A stretch of 63,067 nucleotides of DNA, counting the filler, from Hyphochytrium catenoides (lineage: Eukaryota; Protista; Hyphochytriomycota): assembly GCA_900088475.1 (NCBI GenBank). It is 9 parts of 9 records of this genome, joined end to end, with 100 filler letters (N's around TTAATTAATTAA, not from the genome) between each part and the next. Parts side by side here need not be neighbours in the genome. Positions count along the whole stretch, not along the records: positions 1 to 23,268 come from FLMG01001708.1; 8 more parts are not named here. The stretch is one strand, 5' to 3'. Position numbers and translations under genes: made by a program. The notes below the pieces were generated by a model, which saw only the letters and a program-made list of their open reading frames with translations, made no database searches and had not been told where the DNA came from. Below, one piece after another: positions 1,874 to 22,671 of this stretch; position 1 is the stretch's first letter; each line of letters opens with the position of its first letter.

Positions 1874-4800
1874 CTACCTCCTCCCTGGTCGTTTCGCCTT
1901 GACCACTCTTCGACCTGTGGCGGTGGTCTTGGGTGCGCTACCAAGAGAAAATCCGCCAGCAGGTGGACCCGCAGGGGCGCCAAACGTGGACTGCGAGCTT
2001 GGTGCTCCAAAGGTGAATGCGGGTGTTCCCCCAGCTCCTCCACCACCGAACGTGGAGCTCGGTGCTCCTCCAAAGGTCGGCGCTGGAGTGGATGGAGCCC
2101 CAAATGCAGGTGTGGAAGGTGCCCCAAAGGTTGAGGCTGGAGTTCCAAAGGCTGGTTGACTAGATCCGAAGTTTGTTGGGGAAGGCTGTGCGGAGGGAGC
2201 ACCAAAGTTCCCGCCAAAGGATGAGCTACCGGGTGGAGCGCCTCCGAACCCGGAACTGGAAAGGCCAAAGCCTGAAGTACTAGAACCACTGAAGGGAGCT
2301 GTTGAGGCGGGCCCTGAAGAGCCAAACCCGCTACTAGCCCCAAAGGCTCCAGACGATGAGCCACCAAAAGGGGAAACGGTGGACCCACTGCCAAAGGCAG
2401 GAGTAGATAGACTGGAGCTCGAAGGTTTTCCACCTACAGGAGATCCTGTGTCCATTGAAGCGTCCGCTCCGGTCTTGCTTGCAGGAGTCTGGAGAGAAGG
2501 AGCAGCACTGCCGAAGCCTCCAAATGAAGAAGTATTTGAAGAAGAAGGAGCGCCAAATGTGGCACTACTCGCTGCGCCAAAGCCTTGTGTAGAGGAAGGG
2601 GTCCCGAAGGCCGGAGCTGACGAAGACGAGGTTGCTCCGAAAAGAGTTGTGGAAGAGGAGCCAGAAGTCCCGAAGCCAAATGAGGGCCCAGAGGTTGAAG
2701 AAGGTGTTAAAGTACTACTCGCCTTGTCGCTTGTCTCTGAGGTTGCGCTTTTACCACCAAAGTTAAAGGGGGAAGGAGATGCAGCGCCGAATGGCACAGT
2801 TGTCTTGCTTTCCTCCTTCGCAGGAGTCCCAAAGGTGAATGAAGGGCCTGCTGATACGGAAGAAGAGGAAAAGCCAAGGGAAGGATTTTTTCCGTCGGCT
2901 TTCTCTCCCCCAGACCCGACAACGAAAGAACTAGTGACCGAGCTTTCTTGAGAGCTAGAGCTAATGGAAGAATGTTTGTCTGAGGCGCCGAAAGCTGAGG
3001 GCACTCCCGCACCAAAGGTCACCGGCCCTTCACCACTTTTGGAGCCAAAAGTAAAGGGTGAGGTTACTCCGCCAGCCGATACTGGTGGGGCGGATGCTCC
3101 CTTGCCGTCGTCAGCGGTAGCAGAACCAAAGGTAAACCCTTTCGCACCCGCGTCATTTGAGGGTTGGCTTCCTCCAAATGAAAATGCGCTTCCAGAGGGA
3201 GCAGGGGAGGAAGGCTTACCAAAATTAAATAATCCGCTACCACTACCCGGTGCAGAGTTATCCACCTTTGAAATCTCCGCATTGTTTCCACCAACGTCGC
3301 TCTTTGAAGGACCATCCTTGCTTCCACTTCCGCTGGTACCAAACGTGAAGCCACCGGCACTGGTTGCCGAAGAGCCAAAGCTTGTCCCACCGGAGGACGA
3401 GGCTATGGGGGCAAATCCTGTGCTCATTTTCTTCTCCGGTGCCCCTCCCTCGTCTTCTACTCGGCCTCGCTTCTTCTGTGAAGCTTCTGCAGGATCGCCT
3501 GTTGAAGGCGCCCCACCGGACAATGTAGAACCAAAACTGAAGGTTGGCTTAGCCTCGACTCCACTTGAAGAGGACACGCCAAATCCAGTGGCTGGTGTGG
3601 CAGTGGAAATAGTGCTGGATGGGGCCTTAGGAGGAGCCCCAAAAGTGAAGGTGGGGGCATCCTTCTTTCCTTCTTTCCCCTCCACTGTGCTTTGAACTCC
3701 GAAGGACAAGGATGATGGAAGTTTTCCTCCTGAGGCCGAAAAGGCAGAAGGGACTGAAAAGCTTCCACCCTGACCCTTCTGCTCTGCTTCTGACTGAGAC
3801 TCTTCGCTCTTCCTCTTTTCAGCCGACACATTAGTCTCAGAAGTCGCAGATACGGAGAAGGGCTTAGTGCCGGGTCCATTAGTCGCAACAGCTGGACCGC
3901 CCCCTCCGAACGTAAACTGAGGCTGCAGTGCTGGAAGCTCAGAGTCCTTCGTTGTGGATCCAAAGGCTTCGGTGCCACTTGGCAGACCGAAGGTGAAGCC
4001 TGTCGCTGTCCCGACGGATGGCGTTGCTGCCAACGATGAAGAGTTCTCTTTACCAGAGGCTTTGCTTTCGTCCTTACCAGGTGTGAGACCAAAGGTGACT
4101 GTGGCCTGACTATTTGCATTGGGCGGGGGAATACCAAAAGTGAACTTTGGACCCGCTCCACTATCCCCAAGTGACCCAAAGATGGAAGAGCCACTTGAAC
4201 CTGTCGAAGGCGCCCCAGGTTTGGTCGTCTCACATGCTGCACACTTAACGGCATCTTTTTTGTTTGTAATGAGGCAGACCTCGCACTTCCAGCTTCCGGG
4301 TTCAGTCTTGCAGAGGAAGGATAGGTCGTTTGTTACTGCAGGAGGTTGCGGAACCTGGACGGAAGTCGTAGCGCTCGAACCGGCAGGAGGCTGAAAGGAT
4401 GTCGAGGCCGCGGCACTTTTATCCTTTGGTTTGGAAGTCTCGCATGCTGGGCACTTGTCCATATGTGCCTTGTTCCAACACAAACAAGCAGTGCACTGCC
4501 ATTCTGTCGGATCTCGTTTGAAAAGAGTTGCTAGGTCGTTCGTCACGTCCGGCGCTTTACTTGCAGATTGCGCGGCCTGCTTGTCTGCCGTATTCTTTAT
4601 GCTGCTGTTTGCTGGTGGCTTAGGAGCTGCTACTCTCTTTACGACTGTTGAGGGAGAGGGGGCCTTGGGCATGAAGCTAAAGAGTCCATCTGACTTGGCT
4701 CCTTCAGATCCTTCATAGCGGGGAGGAGTGAAGACGAACACAGCATCTGAAATATCGCCATCTATGTCCGCTGCGCCCACTACTCTCAGGGGTGCCGCAA

Positions 4801-7748
4801 AGCTGAACCTTTCACTCTCATTGCCTTCCAAACGAATAGCCTTTGCCTTTTCAGGGGGCGGAGTGAACATATAAGCAGAGGACTCTGCAACCTGCACGTG
4901 CTTACTCTTCTGTATGTTCTGAGGAGTGATTGGCGCAGAAAATTCGAATCCAGGCGACTTCTTTTCGTGCTTTTTCGTTGCATCCAATTGTACAGCTTGA
5001 GGTGGAAAAGCCAAACTTGGCTGCGCTGACGTAGCGCCCCCTAACGTGCCTCGAGGAGGCGTAGGAAGACTAACTGCTGGCGTCTCGGCCGCCTGCTTGG
5101 TAGCCGCTAGCGAGGGTGTAGCGGATGGCTTGATTCGCTCCTCCTATGAAAGTAGGATAGAGTCAACGCCTTGTCATGCATCAAAGCACGTAACAAAAAC
5201 TCACGTCTAGGGGCGATGACATTTCGCTTAGTGTCTCCAATATCTTTTGTGCTACAGTGCCAGAAGAGGAACCTTTTGTGCTCGCTGAAGACCGCTGCCT
5301 GGTAGCCAGCAGACGGGAAGGCCGAGGGCGAGACCGCAAGCCTCCGTATCTCGAAACGGTTGCAGACTGCAGTCCAGATCGCAATCGACTAGTCTCCGTG
5401 GCCAAAGCTGCGGTCCGCCTCAAAGGCTCCTGAGTGACGGACCTTCTGAGATCTGCACTGACAGCTTCCTTGGTACTCTCTACAGCTTCTCTCCTGTACA
5501 GCAAATAGACTTCAGTTCTACCAACTCATCCTAAGAGATTGTTTGAGACCTACCGGTCGCTCTCTGCGATTTCGAGCTCGCGATTATCCAGAAGTCGAGC
5601 TCTCTTAAGCGGTTGACTATGCTCCAAACTCCCCATAGACCTTAGGGAGTGGTCAGAGAAGGTCTACATAAGAACGCGGTGTTAAAGATATGTGTTAGTA
5701 GGAATGACATAATTGTCGCTGGATTGAGAGTACGTCTGAGCTGTGGCACTGTCACGTACCCGGCTAAGGCTACTTTGAGGACGGTATGCATAGGGGTTAG
5801 GTGTCAGGATCATAGGCGCTGGCGGTCTATGGAATGGCATGTAGGGAGGCGGCGGATACATATAGCCATAGGGAGGTGGAGGTACCGCGCCATACTCGTA
5901 GCCACTGATTGCTGGAGGCCAAGGGGCCTGTCCATATGGTGAATTAACGAATGCAGGGGATGACCCCAAACTGTCAGGCACCCGTTGTCGTTTTGGAGTA
6001 TCAGACGGCTCTCCCTGGCTCTGGTCGAAAGGCACTTGAGATTGGGAGGCCGAAGTCTGAATGGGAGGAGGTTCTGTTCCTTTGCGACCAGACGGCGGTG
6101 ACCTCTCACTCACCCTGGACTTATGCCCATCTTGTTCACTCCCTCCTTTCCTACGCTTCTCCTTCGCTTCTTGGGCTTTTGCCTTGTCGTCCCGTTCTTT
6201 AGGCTGAGATGCCTGCTTGGGCGGATTAGACTCTGGTCTCTCCGCAAGTGGTTCAGGACTACGAGTCACCAGGCGCTCCGGAGGCGGACTCGTAGCTTTT
6301 TCCACTAGTCTGGCCTTTTTGGCCGGCTGTCGAGGACTTGGTGTGCCTTCGCCACGGAGGATTACTCTAAGGTTAGCATTGGGAGGTGCACATTCAGTCA
6401 AGAGCTTCACTGCAGCACGAAAATCTTCAATGCTAAGCGTCTCCCCGCTACCAAGCTTCTTCGTTAATAACCTTTCCTGCAGAGTACCAGGGGTTGATGG
6501 CTCAGGTGAGAGGCTGGCACGCTCTCTCTTTCTCCGGGTGCCACGTACTTCTTCTTTTTCTATAGAGGTTTCCGTTTTTGTTGCTGCTACAGAGGGAGAT
6601 GAAGTAGAGGCAGCCGAAGCAGATACTTCAGACACGGTTCGCGCCAAGGTGGAAGCATCAGAAGCAATCGCCTCGAGACTGGTGGAATCCTGACTGTCGG
6701 CAATTATTGCAGCGATCTGAATTTGCTGCACCTCTTCAATCTGTCGTCGAGACTCTCCGTCTTCCTTCGACTCCTAACCAGTAAGATGGTAAGAATTGGA
6801 CAAGCGGAAATGCTTAGTGTGACTAGAGTACCTCTTCTTCCTGCGTTTGAGAGCTTAAAGAGTGATCATCGGGAATGACGTTCGATGCTTGGCCGCCTGA
6901 CTTTCTGGAGTTCCGTCTTGTGGTTGTTCGCACGGCATACGCCAAAACCTCGGCCTCTGGCTGCATTTCTGGAGGAGTACTATGACCCTTCACCATCTCA
7001 CTAGAAGTTAATGACTTATCGGGGTTGGCCTTGGTGGTTTGTGCCTTGGCCAATTGCTCTTCTAGCAACTTCCTTCTATGCTGGACGATGGTGTCAATGA
7101 GAATCGATTTCCGCACATATTTCTGGTTGTCAGGCTTATTGATAGGCTCCAGGTGGTAGGCTTCCAACTCTTCGCGAAGGTCCTTGACGGTGAGCCGTCC
7201 TAGCTTCTTGCGCTCACTCTCTTCCCAATCTGGCCAGATCACGTCATTATCTAAGCACAATTTTTGTCAGAGCGACAACTTGTTGATTGAACTTCCTGCA
7301 CTGCACCTTCATTGCGTGTGCTAACCTCATAACCGTCTATGCATACCTCCTACCTACCTTGCAGTGACGTGTCCGAAAGCTGAGGAGTTGCGTTGTCTTG
7401 GCCCTTGCCATTGCCTTCGATTGTCCCGCTCTCTTTAGAAGTGATAGAAGCACGCTGAGCAGGGAACAAGGAACCCGCATCTATCAACCTGTCAGACGGG
7501 ATACTAGAGTCATCATCTTCCTGGGGCATAGGAGGAATGGATCCTTGGCTCTCGTCTTCCTGAGAGCCAACCCAGGGCTTCAGAACAGAAAAAAATTTGC
7601 CCAGGAGTCCACTTCCCTCTTCCTCTGTCTCCTGTGACTCCGGCCGCACGCGAGTAGCACGCGGATATCTGCTATCTAATAGCTGGGTATGCCCAGCATT
7701 AACTCGGGATCTTGTCCTTCTTCGACCCGATGGGCTCGGCGCCTGCAT
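1874..7748 (-). CDS. NUP153: Nup153/Nup1-type nuclear basket nucleoporin (about 6 exons; RanBP2 zinc fingers and FG repeats)
   Basis: ATG at 7748 in GCCACCATG context. Phase-compatible GT-AG introns at 7357-7251, 6831-6774, ~5759-5666, ~5553-5494 and 5204-5144. N-terminal amphipathic GLLGKFFSVLKPW. Nup153-like motif AQKILETLSEMSSPLD. Two RanBP2 fingers (WQCTACLCWN...CPAC, WKCEVCLITN...CAAC). Long FxFG/PAFG region and basic C-terminus GRRVVKAKRPGRR. Confidence 0.88.
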
Positions 7749-12039: not shown

Positions 12040-15000
12040 ATGACTCAGCAACAAGAGCCATACACTGCAGCACAATTTAAGCAAGCGATCCGCGCTCTGT
12101 ACTTCGAAAGAAATGAGGCAGTTCGGAAGAAGGCTAACGAATGGCTTCAGCAATTTCAGAAGTCGCATGAAGCCTGGGAGATCTCCATAGACTCGCTGCA
12201 GAAGGCCGATGCTTCAGCAGAGGAGGCCGTTTTCTGTGCCCAAACCCTGCATAGAAAAGCTCAACGCCGGCACGAGATTGTGGAGGGAGGCTTCAACCCA
12301 TTGATCTCAGCTCTATTGCAGCTTATTAGAAAGTATGCCGCTTCCAACACGCACTCGGTTGTGCTTACGAAGCTCTGTCTGGCACTCGCGGCGTTCGTGA
12401 TTATCCCAGGCACAGATGCTCACACACCAGTCAACATGTTCAACTCCACGCTTTCGTTCTTTGATGGAGTCAGTGATCCTGATGCTGACAGCCATGCTCT
12501 TCTGGAGTTCCTGTCAGTTCTTCCTGAAGAATGCGAAGATGAACATCTGTCGCTGTCGAAGACCAAGAGAACAGAGAGCTCTGGGGCGATCCGCTCTTGC
12601 GGAGGACAGGTCCTGCAGGTGCTGATCACGATGGATCGTTTGGGGAGAGAGCAACGGCTGAAGAGATCTGAGCACCTCCGCTTTCAAGTCTTCAAATGCC
12701 TACGTGTCTGGGTAGAGTTCGATGGCATCAGTCCTGCACTGGTGGTCAGTTCTGGTCTCATGGACCAGCTATTCCACTCGCTCGCGTCAGGTTCATCTCT
12801 GTCAATAGCTTCTGAGGCAATCAGCGCAACCTGCGCTAAATGCTCAACGTTAGGCATAGAGCAGATCCAGCTATCCGAGATTATCTTCGCCAGACTCTTG
12901 GACCTGTTTCAGCTTTACCATGCTAAGCACAACGGCAATCCTTCTTCCCCCTCGTCTTCTTCTTCCTCCAGTCTAGCCGATGACAGCGACTGGGAAGTGG
13001 CACTGGTCAAAGTTACAGTGAGTGCGGCGGAAGCCTTCATCAAAATGATTCTGCAACCTCCCACCGACCGACTTTCGACCTATAGGAACAAGCTGGTAGA
13101 GGCACTGGTAGAGTACACGGGAAGTAGGATAGTCCCCGTTTCTTCTGCGGTCTTGGACTACTGGGCAGAGCTCTTAGATGTGATCAAGAGAGAGTGTCCA
13201 TCTCTGCTTGCCCAATTTGACATTCTTTTCGTCAAAGTGTCGATCGTTGCCTCTTCGCAGGCTCAGTTTCCCATGGATTATGAGGAGATGGATGAGGAGC
13301 TTAAAGATCAGTTTTCTGTTTATCGGAATGATATTAGGGAGCTGTTGAGGGCGATAGTTATTGGCCGCACTCCTACAAGCACGCTAGACTTCCTGGCCCA
13401 GATCGCCAAGTCATATGGCGAAGAGTTCGAAGCAAATGGACAAGCAGGCAAGGATGGGATCAAGGTGAGATGCAACGGGAGTAGTGGACTAGGGGAAGAG
13501 CTTAAGGGCTATAAAATGGGAAAGTGAGAACGAAGAGGGCTCTGAGAGAAAGGACGGGGCGGGCAAGGGAAGCAAACAACAGAAAGAGTAGGATGGTCGA
13601 CCATTGTTGAGGACGTCTAAGCTATCTTTGCTAATTGACATCATGCTAACACTTGCTTTCTTCTCTGTATAACGCTCTACTGTTGTTTCATTACTCGCCA
13701 CACTTCTACGACGCTACCTATCGCAGTGGAGACGTTTGGAGATGCTTCTGCACGCGTTGAGCACTGTGACCAAGAGTGTTCCAGTGGACGAGAGTACATT
13801 TATGCCCAATATTATCAGCAGCCTCCCACGACTCCAGCCCAAGCATCCAGGGCTCTTCTGCACGGCTGCACTTCTTATTGGACAGTCTTCCCGCTGGATC
13901 TCAAGGCATCCTTCTCTCCTGGACCCTTCAATACGGTTTCTAGAACAGACTTTCAATATGCCGGAGGAGGATTCTCTGTTTCCCATGAGAAGCAAGCAGG
14001 ATCACACTGGGGCGGTGGCCTTTCTCCAACTTTGTTCTTTGTGTGCTCCTGTCTTGGCGCAAGGCATGCAGTGGAACTACCTCACAGACCTGTTAAGCTC
14101 TATTAACGCAAAGAACGTGAGGACGAAGAGCAAGGTGCTCATCTTGGAAGGAATATGCAAGGTCTTCTCTTTCCTCCCTCCCCAAACCTGCCAAGCTGCT
14201 ACTCAGCAATTGGCCGGCGCTTTCTTCTCCGACTTAGACAAAGCCGCAATTGGAGCAAATGGGGATAAAGATAGAGTTGTTGCCCTATCGAAACTCCTTG
14301 TCATCCTTCGAGCGATCAAGCCAGAGTTTGCCTCAGCTCATAATACGGGAAGTTCAACGCATCAGCCTCTTTCTCTGGTTATGCAGAAGTTCTGGGGCCT
14401 TTTCTCACAGCACTATGTATTCTGGAAGACGAACCCTGAGGTGCTTTCTATGGCCTCTAAGGCACTCGCAGAGGGCCTGGCCAATCCAGCAGCTTCTGGA
14501 ATAGAGACCATAATCGCGGCTCTGGAGTGGATGATAAGGACATATGAGGGTGGCGCTCTAGACGCTAATCTGCTTCAGATCACTTCTTCTTGTCTTCCTC
14601 TCTATGAGAAGAACAACCATTTGTCTACTTGCCTATCCCATGCCCATCAAAGACTGACGGATGCTACCGCTCAAACTCTCAGCACGGCTCCAGGCAAATT
14701 TGATCAATTGCCAGACGTCACGAAGCACTTCTTTGACTTTTCTTCTGCCTGCTTGGACTCGAGGATCCAGGTGGTCACTCCAGAGTCCCTAGGCAAGACT
14801 GTGGAGCTAGCACTTCGAGGACTCGAAGTGCAGCACAAAGAAGCCGGGACCTCTCTTCTCCGCTTCCTGCAATCTCTGTGTTCTCTGCAGGAGGAGTACA
14901 AGAAGCGAAGTATGGACACACCAGACCCTTCCACGAACATGAAAGCACAGAGAGCGCTAGAGCTTCTTCACCACGTCTTCGTAGGGAGAGAGATGGGCGT

Positions 15001-15430
15001 AAGGCTGGTCAAGGGACTTGTCGCTGCTGCCTCCCTCATGCCCGCGTTCATGATAGAAGAAGTCTCTGAGACACTCAGGCAGATTTGTCTTCAACTCGGC
15101 GTCTCTCAGTTCTCTGCGTGGTTGAAGGTCGTGGTGCTCTCTGACCCTGCGTTTCCACGGCCCAATCTCACGCAGCAAGTCAAAGAGAAGTTCTGCATTG
15201 ATTTGCTAACGCCTGCCTGCTACACCAGCAAACATAAGTTCAAGAGGGCACTGAAGATGTTCTGTGGAGGAAAGAGAAAGGGAGGAGAGGGAATGCCGGC
15301 ATCGGCATCTTCTCTTTCTCATGGCAGGCTTGAGCGTTCCAGATCATTGGTCAATATTGCTGGAGTTGAATCTCCGTCAAGGCCAGTTCGGCCGCGATCA
15401 GGTAGCTCTGATTACGTTAGGTCACACTAG
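12040..15430 (+). CDS. Importin-beta-family karyopherin (transportin-3/Mtr10 or importin-13-like), two exons
   Basis: IBN_N-like start (RKKANEWLQQFQKSHEAWEIS...FCAQTLHRK), VLTKLCLALA, LEFLSVLPEE, FSVYRNDIRELL. HEAT-like helical composition. Phase-0 intron 13465-13726 (gtgaga...cgcag) joins the 12028 and 13736 ORFs. Confidence 0.88.
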
Positions 15431-17629: not shown

Positions 17630-19867
17630 ATGTCCGAACTAGATGAGATCAACCTTGACGAGGGTGCGGAAGACTTCTTCGCTAGCCTGGGAGGTGATGA
17701 AGGCATTGGTGATGCAGCGTTTGCTGAAGGTGACGGGGATTTACTGAATGCTGTTGATGATAGCGCTTTCCCCACTGCTGACGAGTCTTCTGAGGATGAA
17801 GTGCCGGTAATGTACTAGAACAGAGAAGCAGGGACGCACAACGATATCGTCAACGCTAAATGACTTCTTACCTGCGTTACCTCTTGTTCCTTCTTTGCCC
17901 TAGTTATCCGCTATCGCAAGGCGGCCGAAGCCGTCGGCGAAGAAAGGTGCAGCAGGCAGGGCAAATGGCAAGGCAAGCGCAGGAAAAGGCGCAAAAGCCA
18001 AAAGCGGCTCGAAAGCAGCAAAGAGTCAAGCGAAAGCTGTGGCGATCGCTCCAACTGTCAAGAATGAAGTTGTGCCGGCTGAGACACCCTCAAAGAGTGC
18101 CGTGACAAGCAGTAGTCTTAGCTATGTTCCACCCAAGCCTATCAAGGCTGAGCCCAAAGCTGAGGCGCTTACCATGGAAGAAAGGATTGTGAACCTCCTA
18201 GTCCCTGGCATGAGAGTCCAGGAAATAATGTCTCTGCTGAAAAAGCTGAGAGAGTCACAGAAGGTAACAGATTCCGAAGGCTCGTCTCCAGCTGACGCTG
18301 ACCCCAAGACTGGTAGGTGGTGAAGATGGCACAAAGAATCTTGAGCCGTTGTCAATATGATTAGGAGCGACAAGCCACCGTTCTTGCATTATGTCTCGCT
18401 TTGACGCCATCTCCTTCCATAAGTTCTCGTAACCCCTTTTCTCAGGTTGATTCTCTACCTAGACTAAAAGCTATCCTCCCTGTTCTTGATGGTTGTCTGG
18501 CCATCTATAGCCCCCCGATACACCTGCGATCTGTGTGGGAATACCGATCAGCAATACTTCGTGCAAGATTACGCTAGAGGAGACACGGTTTGCAGAGGCC
18601 CAGACGGCAGTGGGTGTGGCAACGTGGTGCAGGATCACATCGTCTATGAAGGAAATGCATATAGAAAATTCGAAGGAGAGGAGGACAAGAGCCATCACGG
18701 TCAGGCTCCAAATAAATTGTTCTCTAGCAGCTTCAATCTCAGGACCGGGATCTCAACGGTGAGTCCCCACCCTATCGATCCTCAAGCTATTCCCACGAGA
18801 GGCTGACAGACAGTCCTTCTCTCCTCCGTATCCGGGCCCCTCAGGTGGGTCAAGACTCTGGCCAACTGCGCAGAGCTGCTGAGTATGTTGAAATGAACCT
18901 TAGTCAAATGGGCAAAGATGACCGGCGGACGCGCGTCGGCTATAAAGATCAGGTGGGCCACTAGTCTCAAGCATCATTAATAGTTCTGCGCTTCAGCTTT
19001 TCCCCACCTCTCGATCCTCTTAGTGAAGCACTGTTTCCTCCCGTGTTCCATTGGCGACTATACCTTCTCGCCTCTCGACGTATGGAGTCAAAAGGACCTC
19101 GCCATAGCTAATACGTGTCGGTCTCCTATGTCTAGATGAAGAAGAAGGCATTCGAACTTATTGTCAACGCTGCGCATAACCTTGATATACACGAACAAGT
19201 AATCACCAAGGCTCAACTCATGTTTGCAAGCTTTCGAGATGACAGAGAGCATGTCCATCAGTTCGAGGCCATGGTCGCAGCCTGTATCATGGCTGCATTT
19301 CTAGAGTCAGGCAAGGCCATGTACGATGCCACACAGGGAGGGACTCGACAGAAGACGTCATACAAGGACTTCCTCTCATCTCTCAATAAGGAAAGCAAGG
19401 AAGCAGAGGACGATAAGCTTCCTCTCTTCGAATGCAGATTTTGTGGAGCCACGTTTAATGCCAAGAAGTGGCTCCAGTATCACAATTGCAGCGCTGCACC
19501 CGAAAAAGGCAAAGAGAAGAACTCTGATACGGCTCAGAAGAAGCCTCGTCTTCCTCCACGACCTCCATCGTCTCCACCTCTGAGCATGAACCTGACTGCA
19601 AATGGTAACGGCAAGAAGTGGTTCCAATGCCCAGAGTGTCCCATGAAGTTCCTGACGCAAGCAAAACTGGATCAGCATGCCGAGAGGCATTCAAGAAAGC
19701 GAAAAGTGGACGACGATCTCAGCATGTTTGCAGTCCCAAAGGTTAGCAAGCTGGCAAGTCCCAATCCCTCAGTGCAGCTGCAGCATGTGCATGACAAAGT
19801 TAGCTTTAGGGGCCAGGGGCTAAGGCCATGGTTGGAAAAGATGACTACGGACGGGGAAGACATATGA
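17630..19867 (+). CDS. TFIIB-related protein: acidic/basic N-terminal extension, Zn ribbon, one cyclin-like repeat and two C-terminal C2H2-type fingers (5 exons)
   Basis: Exons 17630-17806, 17904-18312, 18511-18758, 18845-~18952 and 19136-19867, with phase-compatible GT-AG junctions. Zn ribbon YTCDLCGN...DYARGDTVCRGPDGSGCGNVVQDHIVYEG. B-reader-like AYRKFEGEEDKSHHG. Cyclin-like repeat AFELIVNAAHNLDI...VAACIMAA. Fingers FECRFCGATFNAKKWLQYHNC and FQCPECPMKFLTQAKLDQHAERH. Confidence 0.8.
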
Positions 19868-20628
19868 GCCTCAGTAGTCATTATTGGCCCATTTTCCAAG
19901 ATACCTCTCTCTCTCCTCCTTCGTCTCGTTAGTGGTGTCTCTCTATCAAAGTTCCTTTTCTGGCCGCTTCAGAAGACACTCGTCTCTGCTCTCAACGGTC
20001 CCGTAACTTGACTCAAGTAAGAGCTACGATCCCGGCGAGCTAAACTAGGATTTAAGGTTGCATGGGTTGACAGCTGGAGAAGCCTGCGGAGGACTCGTGG
20101 TGTGACCTTTCTAGGTGAAAAGGCAATGGTGTCCCCCTCACCAGAAGATGAGTGAACACCGGTCGACAGCTGTCCCATAGGTTGAACTAATTTATCAAGG
20201 CACCAGCAGTAAGTCCTCAATGTCCCTTCCAAGAAATGGAGAAGCAGAGGGCGCAAACTGTGATGCTGTCTACTAATATGAATCTTATATTGAACATAGC
20301 ATGTAGCCTTTATGCTATTCTTTAGCATGTGGAAAGAGTAATGAGAGGTCTTTGCCACTAGCCACAGAGTGTCCTTCGTCTGTCTGAACAGATTTCCTTA
20401 TTTACATACATCGCTACTCCATGTTGGAGACAGCAGAGGCAACGCTATTCTTAAGCAGTGAAATAGGAAATGAGAGAGAGCCAGCTGTCATTCACACATG
20501 AGACCACTTGTGGATCCGACAACAAATCGCGCGTGTTTATTGGAGCTTCTGAAGAAAGTTCGCCAAAGGACTAGGCTATAAAGCTCAAGACCTCAGCTCG
20601 GATGCACTACCGAGAGGGCTCTCAGCAT

Positions 20629-20991
20629 TTATCTAGCACGCTGGCGCATCTTTCTGCGCTTCCTTCGGAGGCGGCGCATACGCTTCTTGCGCCACTTAGC
20701 ACGCATACCTCCTTGGACATTCATGAGAATGGTCAGTGTGTCGGCCTCAGCAACGTTGTAGTCGGCAAGAGTGCCAGCCTGTGAAAGCAGCTCCATCAGT
20801 CAGGGCGCTCAAAACATGCACGAGTACGCTAGAGAGAGGCTTACCACAAGCTGCTTTCCGGCGCACATGAGGCGAGCGACAGGGATGAACTCCTGGCTCT
20901 CAATTGCCTCAGCAACATCGGCGATAGTTGCGTTTGGGGCCACATCAAGGGTGATGTGGCCACCGTTCACTCCACGGACAAAGATCTGCAT
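20629..20991 (-). CDS. RPL41: Ubiquitin-like domain (73 aa, ending GG) fused to ribosomal protein eL41 (25 aa); two coding exons
   Basis: Exon 1 (20991-20845) MQIFVRGVNGGHITLDVAPNATIADVAEAIESQEFIPVARLMCAGKQLV. Intron 20844-20779 (gtaagc...tttcacag). Exon 2 (20778-20629) AGTLADYNVAEADTLTILMNVQGG-MRAKWRKKRMRRLRRKRRKMRQRAR-stop. The last 25 aa are unmistakably eL41. Confidence 0.95.
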
Positions 20992-21017
20992 TTTGCTACC
21001 TCCTGGATGCTCAAATG

Positions 21018-21253
21018 CTGTCGTGAAGAAGGAAAGTATGCATAAGGACACAAGCTCGAGGCAACTGCTCCCGGACCTGTTGATAAGCTGCACCCTCACC
21101 TAACTTATACCTAATAACTCAGATAGTAGTCAGATTAAAAACGCCACATCTCTTCCTTTCCCTTCCAATGGAAACTCCTAAACCCTCATCGCATGGCCAC
21201 TCCTACTTCCTTAAGCATCATAACAAGAGCTCAATCATATATAGATACCTTAC
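21018..21253 (-). other. Probable 5'-UTR intron of the UBL-eL41 gene
   Basis: Strong donor CAG|GTAAGG at 21253 on the minus strand, and a pyrimidine-rich acceptor ctttccttcttcacgacag ending at 21018, 26 nt upstream of the ATG. Confidence 0.6.
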
Positions 21254-22671
21254 CTGGCACGATGTGTCCAGCAGAGCAGTCAGCAGAAAGTGAGTGGAGG
21301 TGGCGATAGCGCGGCGCCTGTCATCGCGGCGGACAGGAAAACCAAAGGCGGCGGGCGCCCTGATTGCCGCCAAACCGTCACACCTTTTGTGAGGTGCTTG
21401 GGATGTGTAGGTAGCTGTTCTCAAGTCACATATCCCGTATAAATGTACTGGTACCAATTTGGGATGGGTGTGAGATTTGAAAGGATCCTACGAGACCTCC
21501 ATACTTTATGTGTTATGGTTCGAGTCAACCCTCAAAAGGTATGACCGGAGTGCAGTGGATGAAGAAATGTATGGCTCTCCACTGCTCTCTCCTTGGCTTT
21601 CTCTCATCCAAGAACACTGGCACTGCCAACTATTTGAGGATTCGAGCCCCAGAATTGAGGATTCTCACATCAAAAAAGAAGGCTCGGGTGGGAAGCCCGA
21701 GTATTTTCTTCACATGCCTTAGTTATATCATAGGACAAATGAGTGTTAAACCCGGGTATATTCCGAGTATGGTTATCTTCCCCTACTTTTCCTAGACCAG
21801 ACTTGAACATCCTTCTATCGGTTATATAATAGTTATCAATTCTTTTACTAACCTTCCTACTTGAGTATGTGGGGTCCTGGACTCTNNNNNNNNNNNNNNN
21901 NNNNNNNNNNNNNNNNNNNNNNNNNNNNNNNNNNNNNNNNNNNNNNNNNNNNNNNNNNNNNNNNNNNNNCTCTGTCTGAACCTATTCTGATTCTGCGACT
22001 TTGGTGATGATTATTGTTTGTGTCCTGATACAAAGGTTCTCCACAAAATACGTGGGTAGCAGTACACTAAAATCTCTGCTCTTTACAGAGATTTCCACAT
22101 ACGACAATATACATTCTCTACAACGAATCTCTGCGATCGGTGAAAAGCGAAGCGGAGTTCTGTTTCTGGACGTCTTGGAAACGCTGCGATTGGATGATTT
22201 CAGAATTGCTTTGCTGCAGCCAATCATACTAGCTTTTATTCTCCTTCTTCGTAGCGTCATAGCGTGGGTCGGCGGTCTTTCTCCTCCGCCGTCGCTGATG
22301 CACTGATGCTACTACTAGACAGTAAGTAGCGCTAGTTGTGGGTGCTGATGGAGCAGCGAGAGCATGAATAGAAAGTAGTACCGTTGAAAATCGCAGAGGA
22401 GGGAGCGCCAGCAGGAAAATTGGAAAGACTATCAGGCTGATGAGGTCTTCATCAGGAGAAGTACCCAGCAGCATGCCATGAAGGATTTTCGGCTGGATGT
22501 GCGTCTCCAATAATGTTGTCCATCACAACGAGAAGGCGGGAAAAGCTTTTTGATAAGTAGAAGTCTGCTTTATTGAGATCTTGTGTTTATCAAAGAGCAA
22601 ATAGCTTGCCATCCTTCCTACTGACGACGGACGGTCGACCATTGCTGGGGAAACCATCAGCTGCTGCTTAA

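What the first reader, a model, noticed from the sequence alone, without database searches (positions are those of the whole stretch)
20629..20991. Hidden ubiquitin-like-eL41 ribosomal fusion gene
Seen in sequence: splicing out a 66-nt GT-AG intron gives a 98-aa protein, a 73-aa ubiquitin-fold domain ending VQGG followed directly by MRAKWRKKRMRRLRRKRRKMRQRAR (eL41). The ORF track misses the eL41 exon. Established: the classical carriers are Ub-eL40, Ub-eS31 and FUBI-eS30, whereas eL41 in animals, yeast and plants is a stand-alone 25-codon gene. The UBL here is clearly not ubiquitin. It keeps RLxxAGKQL (its only Lys is the K48 equivalent) and TLxDYN, but has I44->M and LRLRGG->MNVQGG. It is acidic (8 D/E vs 3 K/R) against 17 K/R in eL41. 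Inference: this is a lineage-specific UBL serving as a charge-shielding expression chaperone for eL41, released after GG by a dedicated protease. The freed UBL-GG could be an uncharacterised conjugatable modifier. I cannot tell without a search whether it has been reported in relatives.
Basis: partly seen in the sequence, partly recalled or inferred. Interest (0 to 1): 0.88.

Follow-up and report, generated by a model that had tools for sequence, protein, structure and literature searches.

The report
Spliced ubiquitin-like–eL41 ribosomal fusion gene
This is a real, expressed gene that makes the tiny ribosomal protein eL41 as the tail of a ubiquitin-like protein; the same fusion is found across oomycetes, diatoms and brown algae and is already in databases, though almost nothing has been written about it.

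Summary
On the minus strand, removing a 66-nt GT-AG intron (20844-20779) joins 20991-20845 to 20778-20629. This gives a 98-aa protein: a 73-aa ubiquitin fold ending in GG, followed by a 25-aa eL41. Contigs from three RNA runs carry exactly this junction, and none retains the intron.

The gene is not unique to this organism. A search found 657 clusters of 90%-identical proteins, and nearly all of those listed have the same ubiquitin plus Ribosomal_L41 architecture. Every named one comes from oomycetes or ochrophyte algae (diatoms, brown algae, xanthophytes, raphidophytes, chrysophytes). GG|M is invariant in 87 of 87 aligned members. In Phytophthora infestans the fusion (PITG_15069) is the only L41 gene. 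Databases call it "60S ribosomal protein L41". One review lists the architecture as a single anecdotal case, and I found no dedicated study.

The ubiquitin-like part derives from ubiquitin (27-51% identity). It is acidic, poor in lysine and lacks Arg72. The most likely mechanism, by analogy with FUBI-eS30, is cleavage after GG to release eL41, with the ubiquitin-like part acting as a leader in cis. This step is inferred, not shown.

Two things were noticed in passing. The 5'UTR carries a covarying stem-loop, split by an intron, that ends 6 nt before the AUG and is conserved from oomycetes to brown algae. The fusion also sits next to an E2 gene on contigs that look like giant viruses.

The parts
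21254..21296 (-). Non-coding first exon (5'UTR leader). Its 21-nt core, CTTTCTGCTGACTGCTCTGCT, lies at 21290-21270. The true transcription start lies at or upstream of about 21292 and was not mapped.
   Evidence: The core is identical in L001 (Phytophthora-like) and L007 (Pythium oligandrum) and has 1 mismatch in L002 (Saprolegnia). It occurs once in the window, against 0 expected. Coordinates were checked.
21018..21253 (-). Predicted 236-nt intron in the 5'UTR (GTAAGG...CGACAG).
   Evidence: This is an inference. Donor and acceptor sit at homologous places in 8 loci, with introns of 51-409 nt. NCBI models of Phytophthora (P0005-P0007, P0024) join the two leader parts at this junction. P. infestans L41 is listed as having a 5' intron. 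It was not seen in RNA here: the X5 contig ends at 21020.
20998..21017 (-). 3' strand of the 5'UTR stem-loop (CATTTGAGCATCCAGGAGGT). It pairs with 21291-21254 after splicing, and the base of the hairpin lies 6 nt before the AUG.
   Evidence: RNAfold gives -26.1 kcal/mol. The same shape is predicted in 9 loci. 171/198 cells are paired, against 71-84 in slid registers, and 10 of 22 pair positions show 3-4 pair types. There is no Rfam match.
20845..20991 (-). Coding exon: residues 1-49 of the ubiquitin-like domain, with the start ATG at 20991.
20779..20844 (-). 66-nt GT-AG intron in phase 0, inside the ubiquitin-like domain.
   Evidence: Sequence. It is skipped in contigs of 3 RNA runs. It is absent from the homologous genes of Saprolegnia, Pythium, Lagenidium, Discosporangium, Tribonema and two metagenome ochrophytes, whose CDS is a single ORF.
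20707..20778 (-). Coding exon: residues 50-73 of the ubiquitin-like domain, ending VQGG (GG codons 20712-20707).
20632..20706 (-). eL41, 25 codons, in frame and with nothing between it and the GG.
   Evidence: Pfam PF05162, E 1.5e-9. The amino-acid sequence is identical to that of oomycete and brown-alga homologs. It is the only eL41-like sequence in the window.
20629..20631 (-). Stop codon TAA.
20511..20628 (-). 3'UTR, with AATAAA at 20541-20536. RNA contigs end at 20511-20542.

Best explanation
The locus is the eL41 gene of a stramenopile, probably an oomycete or a close relative. It belongs to a clade-wide family in which eL41 is made as the C-terminal 25 residues of a 98-101-aa precursor whose first 73-76 residues are a divergent, acidic ubiquitin-fold domain ending in Gly-Gly.

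Shown: the gene is transcribed, the 66-nt intron inside the coding region is removed, and the mRNA carries one continuous UBL-eL41 reading frame. The architecture and the GG|M junction are conserved in hundreds of homologs.

Inferred from the established behaviour of Ub-eL40, Ub-eS31 and FUBI-eS30: a ubiquitin-specific protease cuts after Gly73. This releases eL41 starting at its own Met, and eL41 then takes its place at the subunit interface (bridge eB14). The UBL acts in cis as a leader. It lengthens a 25-codon ORF, offsets the +17 charge of eL41 and keeps it soluble or correctly delivered until assembly. After that the UBL is probably discarded rather than used as a general modifier.
For: The spliced frame and the junction are seen in RNA contigs of three runs. 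The spliced protein aligns end to end with the family profile (141 bits). A search found 657 homologs, and nearly all of those listed carry PF00240 plus PF05162. The named ones come from oomycetes, brown algae, diatoms, xanthophytes, raphidophytes, chrysophytes and Chrysoparadoxa. In seven other species or metagenome loci the CDS is one uninterrupted ORF, so the fusion does not depend on a splice prediction. GG and the following MR.KW are invariant in 87/87 members. PITG_15069, which carries this architecture, is the single L41 gene listed for P. infestans, and one L41 gene each is listed for two other Phytophthora and two diatoms. The UBL profile matches ubiquitin over its full length at 60 bits per unit. 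An AlphaFold model of homolog P0001 (pLDDT 92) superposes on ubiquitin at 1.1 A over 73 residues, with the eL41 part as a helix. The net charge of the UBL has a median of -6 across the family. Where dS can be computed, dN/dS of the UBL is 0.14-0.5, while the eL41 protein sequence does not change. By protein-language features, the nearest non-family clusters are FUBI-eS30. FUBI is cleaved from eS30 by USP36, and non-cleavable forms block 40S maturation (PMC8354635). eL41 forms bridge eB14 near the decoding centre (PMC13485352 abstract).
Against: No proteomic or biochemical evidence for cleavage exists in any member, and I found no study of this family. The tail before GG (xVNGG, here NVQGG) lacks the Arg72 and Arg74 of ubiquitin, so it is unknown which protease would cut it. 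The chaperone role rests only on charge and analogy. Animals, fungi and plants make eL41 from a stand-alone 25-codon ORF without such help. The organism of the window is not identified: in a tree of the short protein it falls in an unresolved polytomy, outside the 16-row oomycete clade.
Confidence: 0.8

Rival explanations
1. Besides serving as a leader, the released UBL-GG is a genuine conjugatable modifier with its own E1/E2. The fusion would then couple its supply to ribosome production, as ubiquitin-ribosomal protein fusions do for ubiquitin.
For: GG is invariant, and K27 (80/87 members) and Glu at Ub position 31 (87/87) are conserved. The UBL is under purifying selection. On the virus-like contigs the gene lies directly beside an E2 (UQ_con) gene.
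Against: The UBL evolves fast (27-51% identity to ubiquitin; about 55-68% between the window and the oomycete or brown-alga members). Arg72, the Uba1 determinant, is replaced by D/S/N/E. I44 and L8 are variable. The median is 2 lysines per UBL, and K48 and K63 are mostly lost. An invariant GG is already needed for cleavage alone. Adjacency to an E2 on a densely packed contig may be chance.
Confidence: 0.15
2. The precursor is not cleaved, and the UBL stays attached to eL41 on the ribosome as a clade-specific ribosomal domain.
For: No cleavage data exist, and the tail differs from the LRGG of ubiquitin.
Against: The invariant GG|M junction has no other obvious rationale. By established ribosome structure, eL41 is a single helix buried between the subunits at bridge eB14, near the decoding centre (PMC13485352 abstract), which leaves no room for a 73-aa globular domain. 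Uncleaved FUBI-eS30 is deleterious (PMC8354635).
Confidence: 0.04
3. eL41 is translated on its own from the internal ATG at 20706, and the upstream UBL frame acts only as a regulatory upstream ORF.
For: The Met of eL41 is retained in every member. In contrast, eL40 and eS31 carry no Met after ubiquitin (established knowledge).
Against: Six ATGs precede the eL41 ATG in the spliced CDS. The two parts are in the same frame, without a stop, in all members, and the UBL keeps a foldable ubiquitin core under purifying selection. By established knowledge, Met1 is part of mature eL41 in other eukaryotes, because Met followed by Arg is not removed. That explains why the Met is retained.
Confidence: 0.03
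4. The fusion is an artefact: a chance juxtaposition, a pseudogene or a mis-assembly.
For: Neither a mechanical ORF list nor the protein collection holds the 98-aa product of this window.
Against: Spliced RNA contigs are found in three runs. Hundreds of homologs share the architecture. The leader and a 2-residue deletion are shared with oomycetes.
Confidence: 0.01

Closest known systems
UBL-eL41 fusion proteins of oomycetes and ochrophytes (for example P. infestans PITG_15069, Saprolegnia diclina SDRG_12941, Tribonema minus JKP88DRAFT_220157; UniRef name '60S ribosomal protein L41'; Pfam architecture ubiquitin~Ribosomal_L41)
   Same: Same length class (98-101 aa), the same UBL, the same GG|MRAKW junction and an identical eL41. 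The conserved 5' leader and the 2-residue deletion at Ub positions 39-40 are shared with oomycetes.
   Different: The window's UBL is only 60-68% identical to any member over the whole protein, and 58% to P0001 within exon 1. It lacks the family's conserved K27. It has a 66-nt intron inside the CDS that the other loci examined lack; only Chrysoparadoxa also has an interrupted CDS.
FUBI-eS30 (FAU) of holozoans
   Same: A fast-evolving, non-ubiquitin UBL ending in GG is fused in front of a small, very basic ribosomal protein. FUBI-eS30 clusters are the nearest non-family clusters by protein-language features. Cleavage of FUBI by USP36 is needed for subunit maturation (PMC8354635), which is the model for the mechanism proposed here.
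   Different: The partner differs (eS30 of the 40S subunit) and so does the clade. The UBL here scores best against ubiquitin itself and is not shown to be related to FUBI. This looks like an independent, convergent fusion.
Ubiquitin-eL40 (UBA52/RPL40) and ubiquitin-eS31 (RPS27A/RPS31)
   Same: An N-terminal ubiquitin fold and a C-terminal ribosomal protein, joined at GG. The family profile aligns with these precursors over positions 1-96.
   Different: Their ubiquitin part is canonical, almost invariant ubiquitin that feeds the ubiquitin pool. Here identity to ubiquitin is 27-51% and the E1-recognition tail is lost.
Stand-alone eL41 (RPL41) of animals, fungi and plants
   Same: The same 25-residue product, matching Pfam PF05162.
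   Different: It is encoded there as a free 25-codon ORF, with no leader domain and no processing step (established knowledge; the copy counts for those taxa are in the table).
Other unusual ubiquitin-ribosomal protein fusions (Ub-P1, Ub-eS8, Ub-eS19, Ub-uL1)
   Same: They are listed together with Ub-eL41 as rare architectures in PMC8122580.
   Different: They are reported as isolated cases. The eL41 fusion is instead fixed across every named oomycete and ochrophyte member found.

Membership tests
Stramenopile UBL-eL41 fusion family (PF00240 + PF05162) | N-terminal ubiquitin-fold domain of about 73-76 residues | tested here: met
   Exon 1 matches PF00240 at E 6.8e-5 as a half domain. The full spliced protein scores 141 bits against the family profile. 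The model of homolog P0001 superposes on ubiquitin at rmsd 1.1 A with TM 0.89. The window protein itself was not folded.
Stramenopile UBL-eL41 fusion family (PF00240 + PF05162) | C-terminal 25-residue eL41, in frame, directly after Gly-Gly | tested here: met
   PF05162 matches at E 1.5e-9. The junction is VQGG|MRAKW, and GG|M is invariant in 87/87 members.
Stramenopile UBL-eL41 fusion family (PF00240 + PF05162) | One continuous reading frame in the mature mRNA | tested here: met
   RNA contigs of 3 runs skip exactly 20844-20779, and one contig spans the whole CDS.
Stramenopile UBL-eL41 fusion family (PF00240 + PF05162) | Proteolytic release of eL41 after GG | not testable with these tools
   No proteomic data were available. 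This is inferred from Ub and FUBI fusions (PMC8354635).
Ubiquitin proper | Near-invariant sequence including the K48, K63, I44 and L8 patch and the R72-L73-R74-G75-G76 tail | tested here: not met
   35/73 residues are identical to ubiquitin. The changes are L8V, I44M, K63E, R72N, L73V and R74Q. Only K48 and the GG are kept.
FUBI (FAU ubiquitin-like protein) | Fused to eS30 (PF04758), with orthology to holozoan FUBI | tested here: not met
   The partner is eL41, not eS30. The best sequence and fold matches of the UBL are to ubiquitin. FUBI-eS30 appears only as a look-alike by features.
eL41 (Pfam Ribosomal_L41, PF05162) | 25-residue Arg/Lys-rich peptide matching the family model above its curated cut-off | tested here: met
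   38.1 bits against a cut-off of 22.3.
Oomycete origin of the window | Features shared only with oomycete members of the family | tested here: inconclusive
   The 2-residue deletion at Ub positions 39-40 is shared with exactly the 16 oomycete rows. The 21-nt leader core is identical to that of Phytophthora-like and Pythium loci. However, the tree does not place the window inside the oomycete clade, and searches with a neighbouring ORF gave no organism.

The most novel reading that the evidence does not exclude
The UBL-eL41 cassette is an ancient shared trait of oomycetes and ochrophytes whose expression is controlled by a previously undescribed structured RNA. This is a stem-loop of about 58 nt in the 5'UTR, ending only a few nucleotides before the AUG. 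Its two halves are separated by an intron in most lineages, and its pairing has been kept by compensatory changes from oomycetes to brown algae, xanthophytes and Chrysoparadoxa. It would act as a feedback operator on translation or splicing, for example by sensing unassembled eL41. The same cassette appears to have been captured by marine giant viruses, where it sits beside an E2 gene.
Probability: 0.35. Interest if true: 0.7.

Novelty: new member of a known kind. Interest (0 to 1): 0.45.

Why it matters
eL41 is the smallest and most basic eukaryotic ribosomal protein, and textbooks treat it as a free 25-codon gene. Here the fusion is found in every named oomycete and ochrophyte member retrieved, and in P. 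infestans it is the only L41 gene. If that holds across the clade, it would be a further, independent case beside Ub-eL40, Ub-eS31 and FUBI-eS30 of a very basic small ribosomal protein being made behind a ubiquitin fold. This strengthens the idea that such leaders help to express or deliver these proteins. It also offers a natural test: the same protein is made with and without a leader in different clades.

The fusion is a candidate clade marker. It implies an unidentified processing protease in organisms that include major crop and fish pathogens and key marine algae. It also concerns a gene whose promoter has been used as an expression tool in Phytophthora (PMC4696810).

For this particular window, the finding corrects a gene that ORF-based annotation misses. 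It does not reveal a new kind of system.

Tried and rejected
- The exhaustive profile search of 1.84 billion representatives was swamped by polyubiquitins, whose repeated units add up. It gave no view of the fusion's range beyond.
- Identifying the organism failed. The 564-aa importin-like neighbour found no homolog by the word-based search, and the Atlas gave only generic importin or exportin clusters. The 55-aa ORF product is not on record. The run and organism names are coded.
- The metagenome scan for the 21-nt leader core found one unrelated chance match. It therefore could not show whether other genes share the leader.
- Rfam found nothing in the window or around the gene.
- A single GT-AG intron did not explain the interrupted CDS of Chrysoparadoxa (L013). 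I left this unresolved.
- The listing of cluster members gave no names for the unnamed clades. Presence or absence in Bigyra, alveolates and Rhizaria was therefore not determined.
- The EukProt 'Nonionella stella' record lies inside the diatom clade and is probably diatom-derived, so I did not count it as a rhizarian case.
- Rejected: a PhRiboBox or CCAAT explanation for the conserved leader, because the L41 gene of P. infestans is listed as lacking both.
- Rejected: a DNA-level palindrome, because the two pairing halves are separated by introns of 51-409 nt, and Tribonema keeps the pairing without an intron.

Full report
**1. The observation**

The minus strand between 20991 and 20629 reads as the first-stage reader described.
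- An ATG at 20991 opens 49 codons that end in ...AGKQLV at 20845.
- A 66-nt intron follows (20844-20779), beginning GTAAGC and ending CACAG.
- A further 49 codons plus TAA run from 20778 to 20629.
- Read without splicing, the frame meets two stops inside the intron.

The spliced product has 98 residues: 73 residues ending VQGG, then a 25-residue peptide beginning MRAKWRKKR. Pfam recognises the last 25 residues as Ribosomal_L41 (38 bits against a cut-off of 22.3). It recognises the first exon, which is only half a domain, as ubiquitin at E 6.8e-5.

RNA evidence settles the junction. Contigs of three RNA runs, one of them a declared metatranscriptome, skip exactly these 66 bases. A 334-nt contig covers 20621-20777 joined to 20844-21020, which is the whole coding region in spliced form. 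Nothing covers the intron. Contigs end at 20511-20542, just downstream of an AATAAA at 20541-20536.

Three of the four runs are only guessed to be RNA libraries. Assembled contigs cannot exclude minor unspliced forms.

**2. What it is**

Searching with exon 1 found a 98-aa protein with the same two Pfam domains (P0001). Searching with P0001 found 657 clusters of 90%-identical proteins. Nearly all of those listed are 98-101 aa and carry ubiquitin plus Ribosomal_L41.

Every named member comes from oomycetes or ochrophytes:
- Oomycetes: Phytophthora, Pythium, Lagenidium, Saprolegnia, Thraustotheca, Aphanomyces.
- Brown algae: Discosporangium, Choristocarpus, Scytosiphon.
- Others: Heterosigma, Tribonema, Chrysoparadoxa, Paraphysomonas, Mallomonas.
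- Diatoms: Cyclophora, Corethron, Chaetoceros, Arcocellulus, Minutocellus, Astrosyne.

The ESM Atlas holds separate clusters of this architecture labelled Oomycota and Bacillariophyta. The window's spliced protein aligns from first to last residue with a profile of 87 members (141 bits). It is 60-68% identical to the oomycete and brown-alga members and 53-60% to the other members listed.

In Saprolegnia, Pythium oligandrum, Lagenidium, Discosporangium, Tribonema and two metagenomic ochrophytes the coding region is one uninterrupted ORF. The fusion therefore does not depend on any splice prediction. The 66-nt intron is absent from all seven of those loci.

The supplementary table of a Phytophthora ribosomal-protein survey lists one L41 gene in P. 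infestans, PITG_15069. That is the fusion protein P0004. The same table lists one L41 gene each in two further Phytophthora species and in two diatoms. The fusion is thus the organism's eL41 gene, not an extra copy. The window contains no second eL41-like sequence.

**3. The ubiquitin-like part**

A profile of the family matches ubiquitin over its whole length with a single one-residue gap, at 60 bits per ubiquitin unit. An AlphaFold model of P0001 built on the family alignment (pLDDT 92) shows the beta-grasp order of strands and helices, followed by one long helix for eL41. The UBL of the model superposes on ubiquitin structures at about 1.1 A over 73 residues. The domain is therefore a derivative of ubiquitin.

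It is clearly not ubiquitin, however:
- Identity to ubiquitin is 27-51% across the family (median 38%) and 35/73 in the window.
- Arg72 is replaced by D/S/N/E and Arg74 mostly by Asn.
- Lys63 is Glu or Asp, and Ile44 is mostly Val.
- The K48 equivalent is kept in only 24 of 87 members.
- The invariant positions are the two glycines and a Glu at ubiquitin position 31. Lys27 is kept in 80 of 87 members, but not in the window.
- The domain is acidic throughout the family, with a median net charge of -6. The window has 1 K, 2 R, 4 D and 4 E.
- There is a median of two lysines per domain.

Where synonymous change is not saturated, dN/dS of the UBL is 0.14-0.5, while the eL41 protein sequence is unchanged among the five oomycete-type genes. 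The UBL is thus a constrained but fast-evolving protein, much like FUBI. FUBI-eS30 clusters are also its nearest neighbours outside the family by protein-language features.

**4. Mechanism**

Shown: transcription, splicing and a single reading frame, and conservation of the architecture and of the GG|M junction.

Inferred: cleavage after Gly73 by a ubiquitin-type protease, releasing eL41 that starts at its own Met. This is how Ub-eL40, Ub-eS31 and FUBI-eS30 are processed. For FUBI-eS30 the protease is USP36, and non-cleavable precursors block 40S maturation (PMC8354635). eL41 forms bridge eB14 near the decoding centre (PMC13485352 abstract). By established ribosome structure it is a single helix buried between the subunits, so an attached 73-residue domain is hard to accommodate.

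Independent initiation at the eL41 ATG is unlikely, because six ATGs precede it in the spliced CDS. The retained Met is explained by Met1 being part of mature eL41 in other eukaryotes (established knowledge).

The role of the UBL as a cis-acting leader rests on its charge and on analogy. It would offset charge, aid solubility or delivery, or simply lengthen the ORF. I put this role at about even odds. A second life as a conjugatable modifier is not excluded, but it is not favoured by the loss of the E1-recognition tail, the variable surface and the scarcity of lysines.

**5. The organism**

The window shares two features with oomycetes. One is a 2-residue deletion at ubiquitin positions 39-40, found in exactly the 16 oomycete rows of the alignment. 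The other is a 21-nt non-coding leader core identical to that of Phytophthora-like and Pythium loci.

A maximum-likelihood tree of this short protein nevertheless leaves the window in an unresolved polytomy outside the oomycete clade. Near-identical transcripts occur in soil and plant metatranscriptomes. My reading is an oomycete or a close relative that is not represented among annotated genomes, but this is not settled.

**6. What is known**

Databases already hold the family under the name '60S ribosomal protein L41' or 'hypothetical protein'. A review of ubiquitin and ribosomes lists 'ubiquitin~Ribosomal_L41' as one sequence among rare Pfam architectures and calls such fusions anecdotal (PMC8122580). 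A later review repeats this (PMC11354881). The Phytophthora ribosomal-protein survey lists PITG_15069 as L41 without remarking on the fusion. Seven further full-text searches found no paper that describes the fusion, its distribution or its processing. Subscription journals are not covered by these searches.

The window's gene is therefore a new member of a family that is known to databases and barely known to the literature.

**7. Noticed on the way: a conserved 5'UTR stem-loop**

Upstream of the ATG, the non-coding sequence is better conserved than the UBL itself.
- A first exon ends ...CTTTCTGCTGACTGCTCTGCTGGACACATCGTGCCAG at 21254.
- A predicted 236-nt intron follows (21253-21018).
- The second exon begins CATTTGAGCATCCAGGAGGT at 21017, 26 nt before the ATG.

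Homologous leader halves, donors and acceptors are present in eight other loci, with introns of 51-409 nt. Tribonema has the two halves contiguous. Each of the nine spliced leaders folds on its own into the same shape. The parts, from the base upward, are an outer helix, a CU bulge, a 2-bp step, the invariant UGCUC/GAGCA helix, a 3-nt bulge and an apical stem.

In a fixed register, 171 of 198 cells are standard pairs, against 71-84 when the partner is slid by one or two positions. Ten of the 22 pair positions show three or four pair types. Examples:
- The A-U pair of the 2-bp step in oomycetes, brown alga and Tribonema becomes U-A in the diatom-like locus and G-C in Chrysoparadoxa.
- The outer helix is CUUUCUG/CAGGAGG in oomycetes, ACUCUG/CGGAGU in the brown alga and GCCCCG/CGGGGC in Tribonema.
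- The apical stems are unrelated in sequence but stay paired.

The intron always interrupts the 3' strand of the apical stem. In the window the base of the hairpin lies 6 nt before the AUG. Rfam has nothing there.

Phytophthora gene models in NCBI that wrongly translate the leader join the two halves at exactly this junction. In the window the intron is inferred, because the only RNA contig reaching that far ends at 21020.

A stable hairpin next to the start codon of a highly expressed ribosomal-protein mRNA, kept in place by compensatory change across classes, suggests a regulatory element acting on translation, splicing or both. What binds it is unknown.

**8. Noticed on the way: virus-like copies**

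A distinct 107-aa subgroup of the family (MRGKWKKKR variant) lies on marine metagenome contigs. These have 34% G+C and densely packed, intronless genes for XRN, kinesin, thioredoxin, RFC-like AAA, DnaJ, DNA methylase, a TBP-like protein and thymidine kinase. An E2 ubiquitin-conjugating enzyme gene lies immediately downstream of the fusion (L008-L010).

A syntenic contig is filed as viral in IMG/VR (L017). Two Atlas clusters of this architecture are labelled mostly Nucleocytoviricota, on the basis of few records. No capsid or polymerase hallmark gene lies on the stretches I hold, so a giant-virus origin is likely but not shown.

**9. Verdict**

The gene is a new, intron-bearing, divergent member of a UBL-eL41 family found in oomycetes and ochrophytes. 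Cleavage after GG and the leader role are well-founded inferences, not demonstrated facts. Interest is moderate for the finding as given. The 5'UTR structure and the virus-borne copies are the parts most worth following up.

Noticed in passing
window 21291-21254 and 21017-20998 (minus strand); also L001, L002, L003, L004, L005, L007, L012 and L013 upstream of the gene: There is a conserved stem-loop in the 5'UTR of UBL-eL41 mRNAs, about 58 nt and -26 kcal/mol in the window, ending 6 nt before the AUG. The same shape is predicted in 9 loci from oomycetes, a brown alga, Tribonema, a diatom-like contig and Chrysoparadoxa. 171/198 cells are paired, against 71-84 in slid registers, and compensatory changes occur at 10 of 22 pair positions. 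It has no Rfam match. Its function is unknown; it may be a translational or splicing operator.
   Followed up: yes
window 21253-21018 (minus strand): A 236-nt intron in the 5'UTR is predicted to split the stem-loop. The homologous introns (51-409 nt) sit at the same place in 7 other loci, and Tribonema has none. In the window this is inferred only, because the RNA contig ends at 21020.
   Followed up: partly
L008:10001-10324, L009, L010, L017:10001-10324: A 107-aa UBL-eL41 variant lies on dense, intronless, 34% G+C marine contigs. The neighbouring genes are XRN, kinesin, thioredoxin, RFC-like AAA, DnaJ, DNA methylase, TBP-like and thymidine kinase, with an E2 (UQ_con) gene directly downstream. 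One syntenic contig is an IMG/VR viral genome, and Atlas clusters are labelled Nucleocytoviricota. These are probably giant viruses carrying a ribosomal-protein cassette, but no hallmark gene was seen.
   Followed up: partly
P0005, P0006, P0007, P0024, P0027, P0037 (public gene models): Several NCBI models of Phytophthora and Aphanomyces start too far upstream and translate the conserved leader, giving strings such as 'HFLLTALLGTS', 'LSADCSA' and 'FEHPGG'. The resulting 131-159-aa proteins are annotation artefacts, but they reveal the leader and its splice junction.
   Followed up: partly
L013:1501-1967 (Chrysoparadoxa australica): The CDS of this homolog is interrupted: 467 nt encode 101 aa. 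A single GT-AG intron did not reproduce the protein, so the exon structure is unresolved.
   Followed up: no
P0067 (EukProt record named Nonionella stella): A UBL-eL41 filed under a foraminiferan groups inside the diatom clade. It is probably diatom-derived material in that transcriptome rather than a rhizarian gene.
   Followed up: no
window 13736-15430 (+), 1874-5014 (-), 19136-19867 (+): Three long neighbouring ORFs were noted: an importin/transportin-like ORF of 564 aa with a weak TNPO3/IPO13 match, for which the word-based search found no homolog; a 1046-aa ORF with a RanBP2-type zinc finger; and a 243-aa ORF with a C2H2 zinc finger. None helped to identify the organism.
   Followed up: partly
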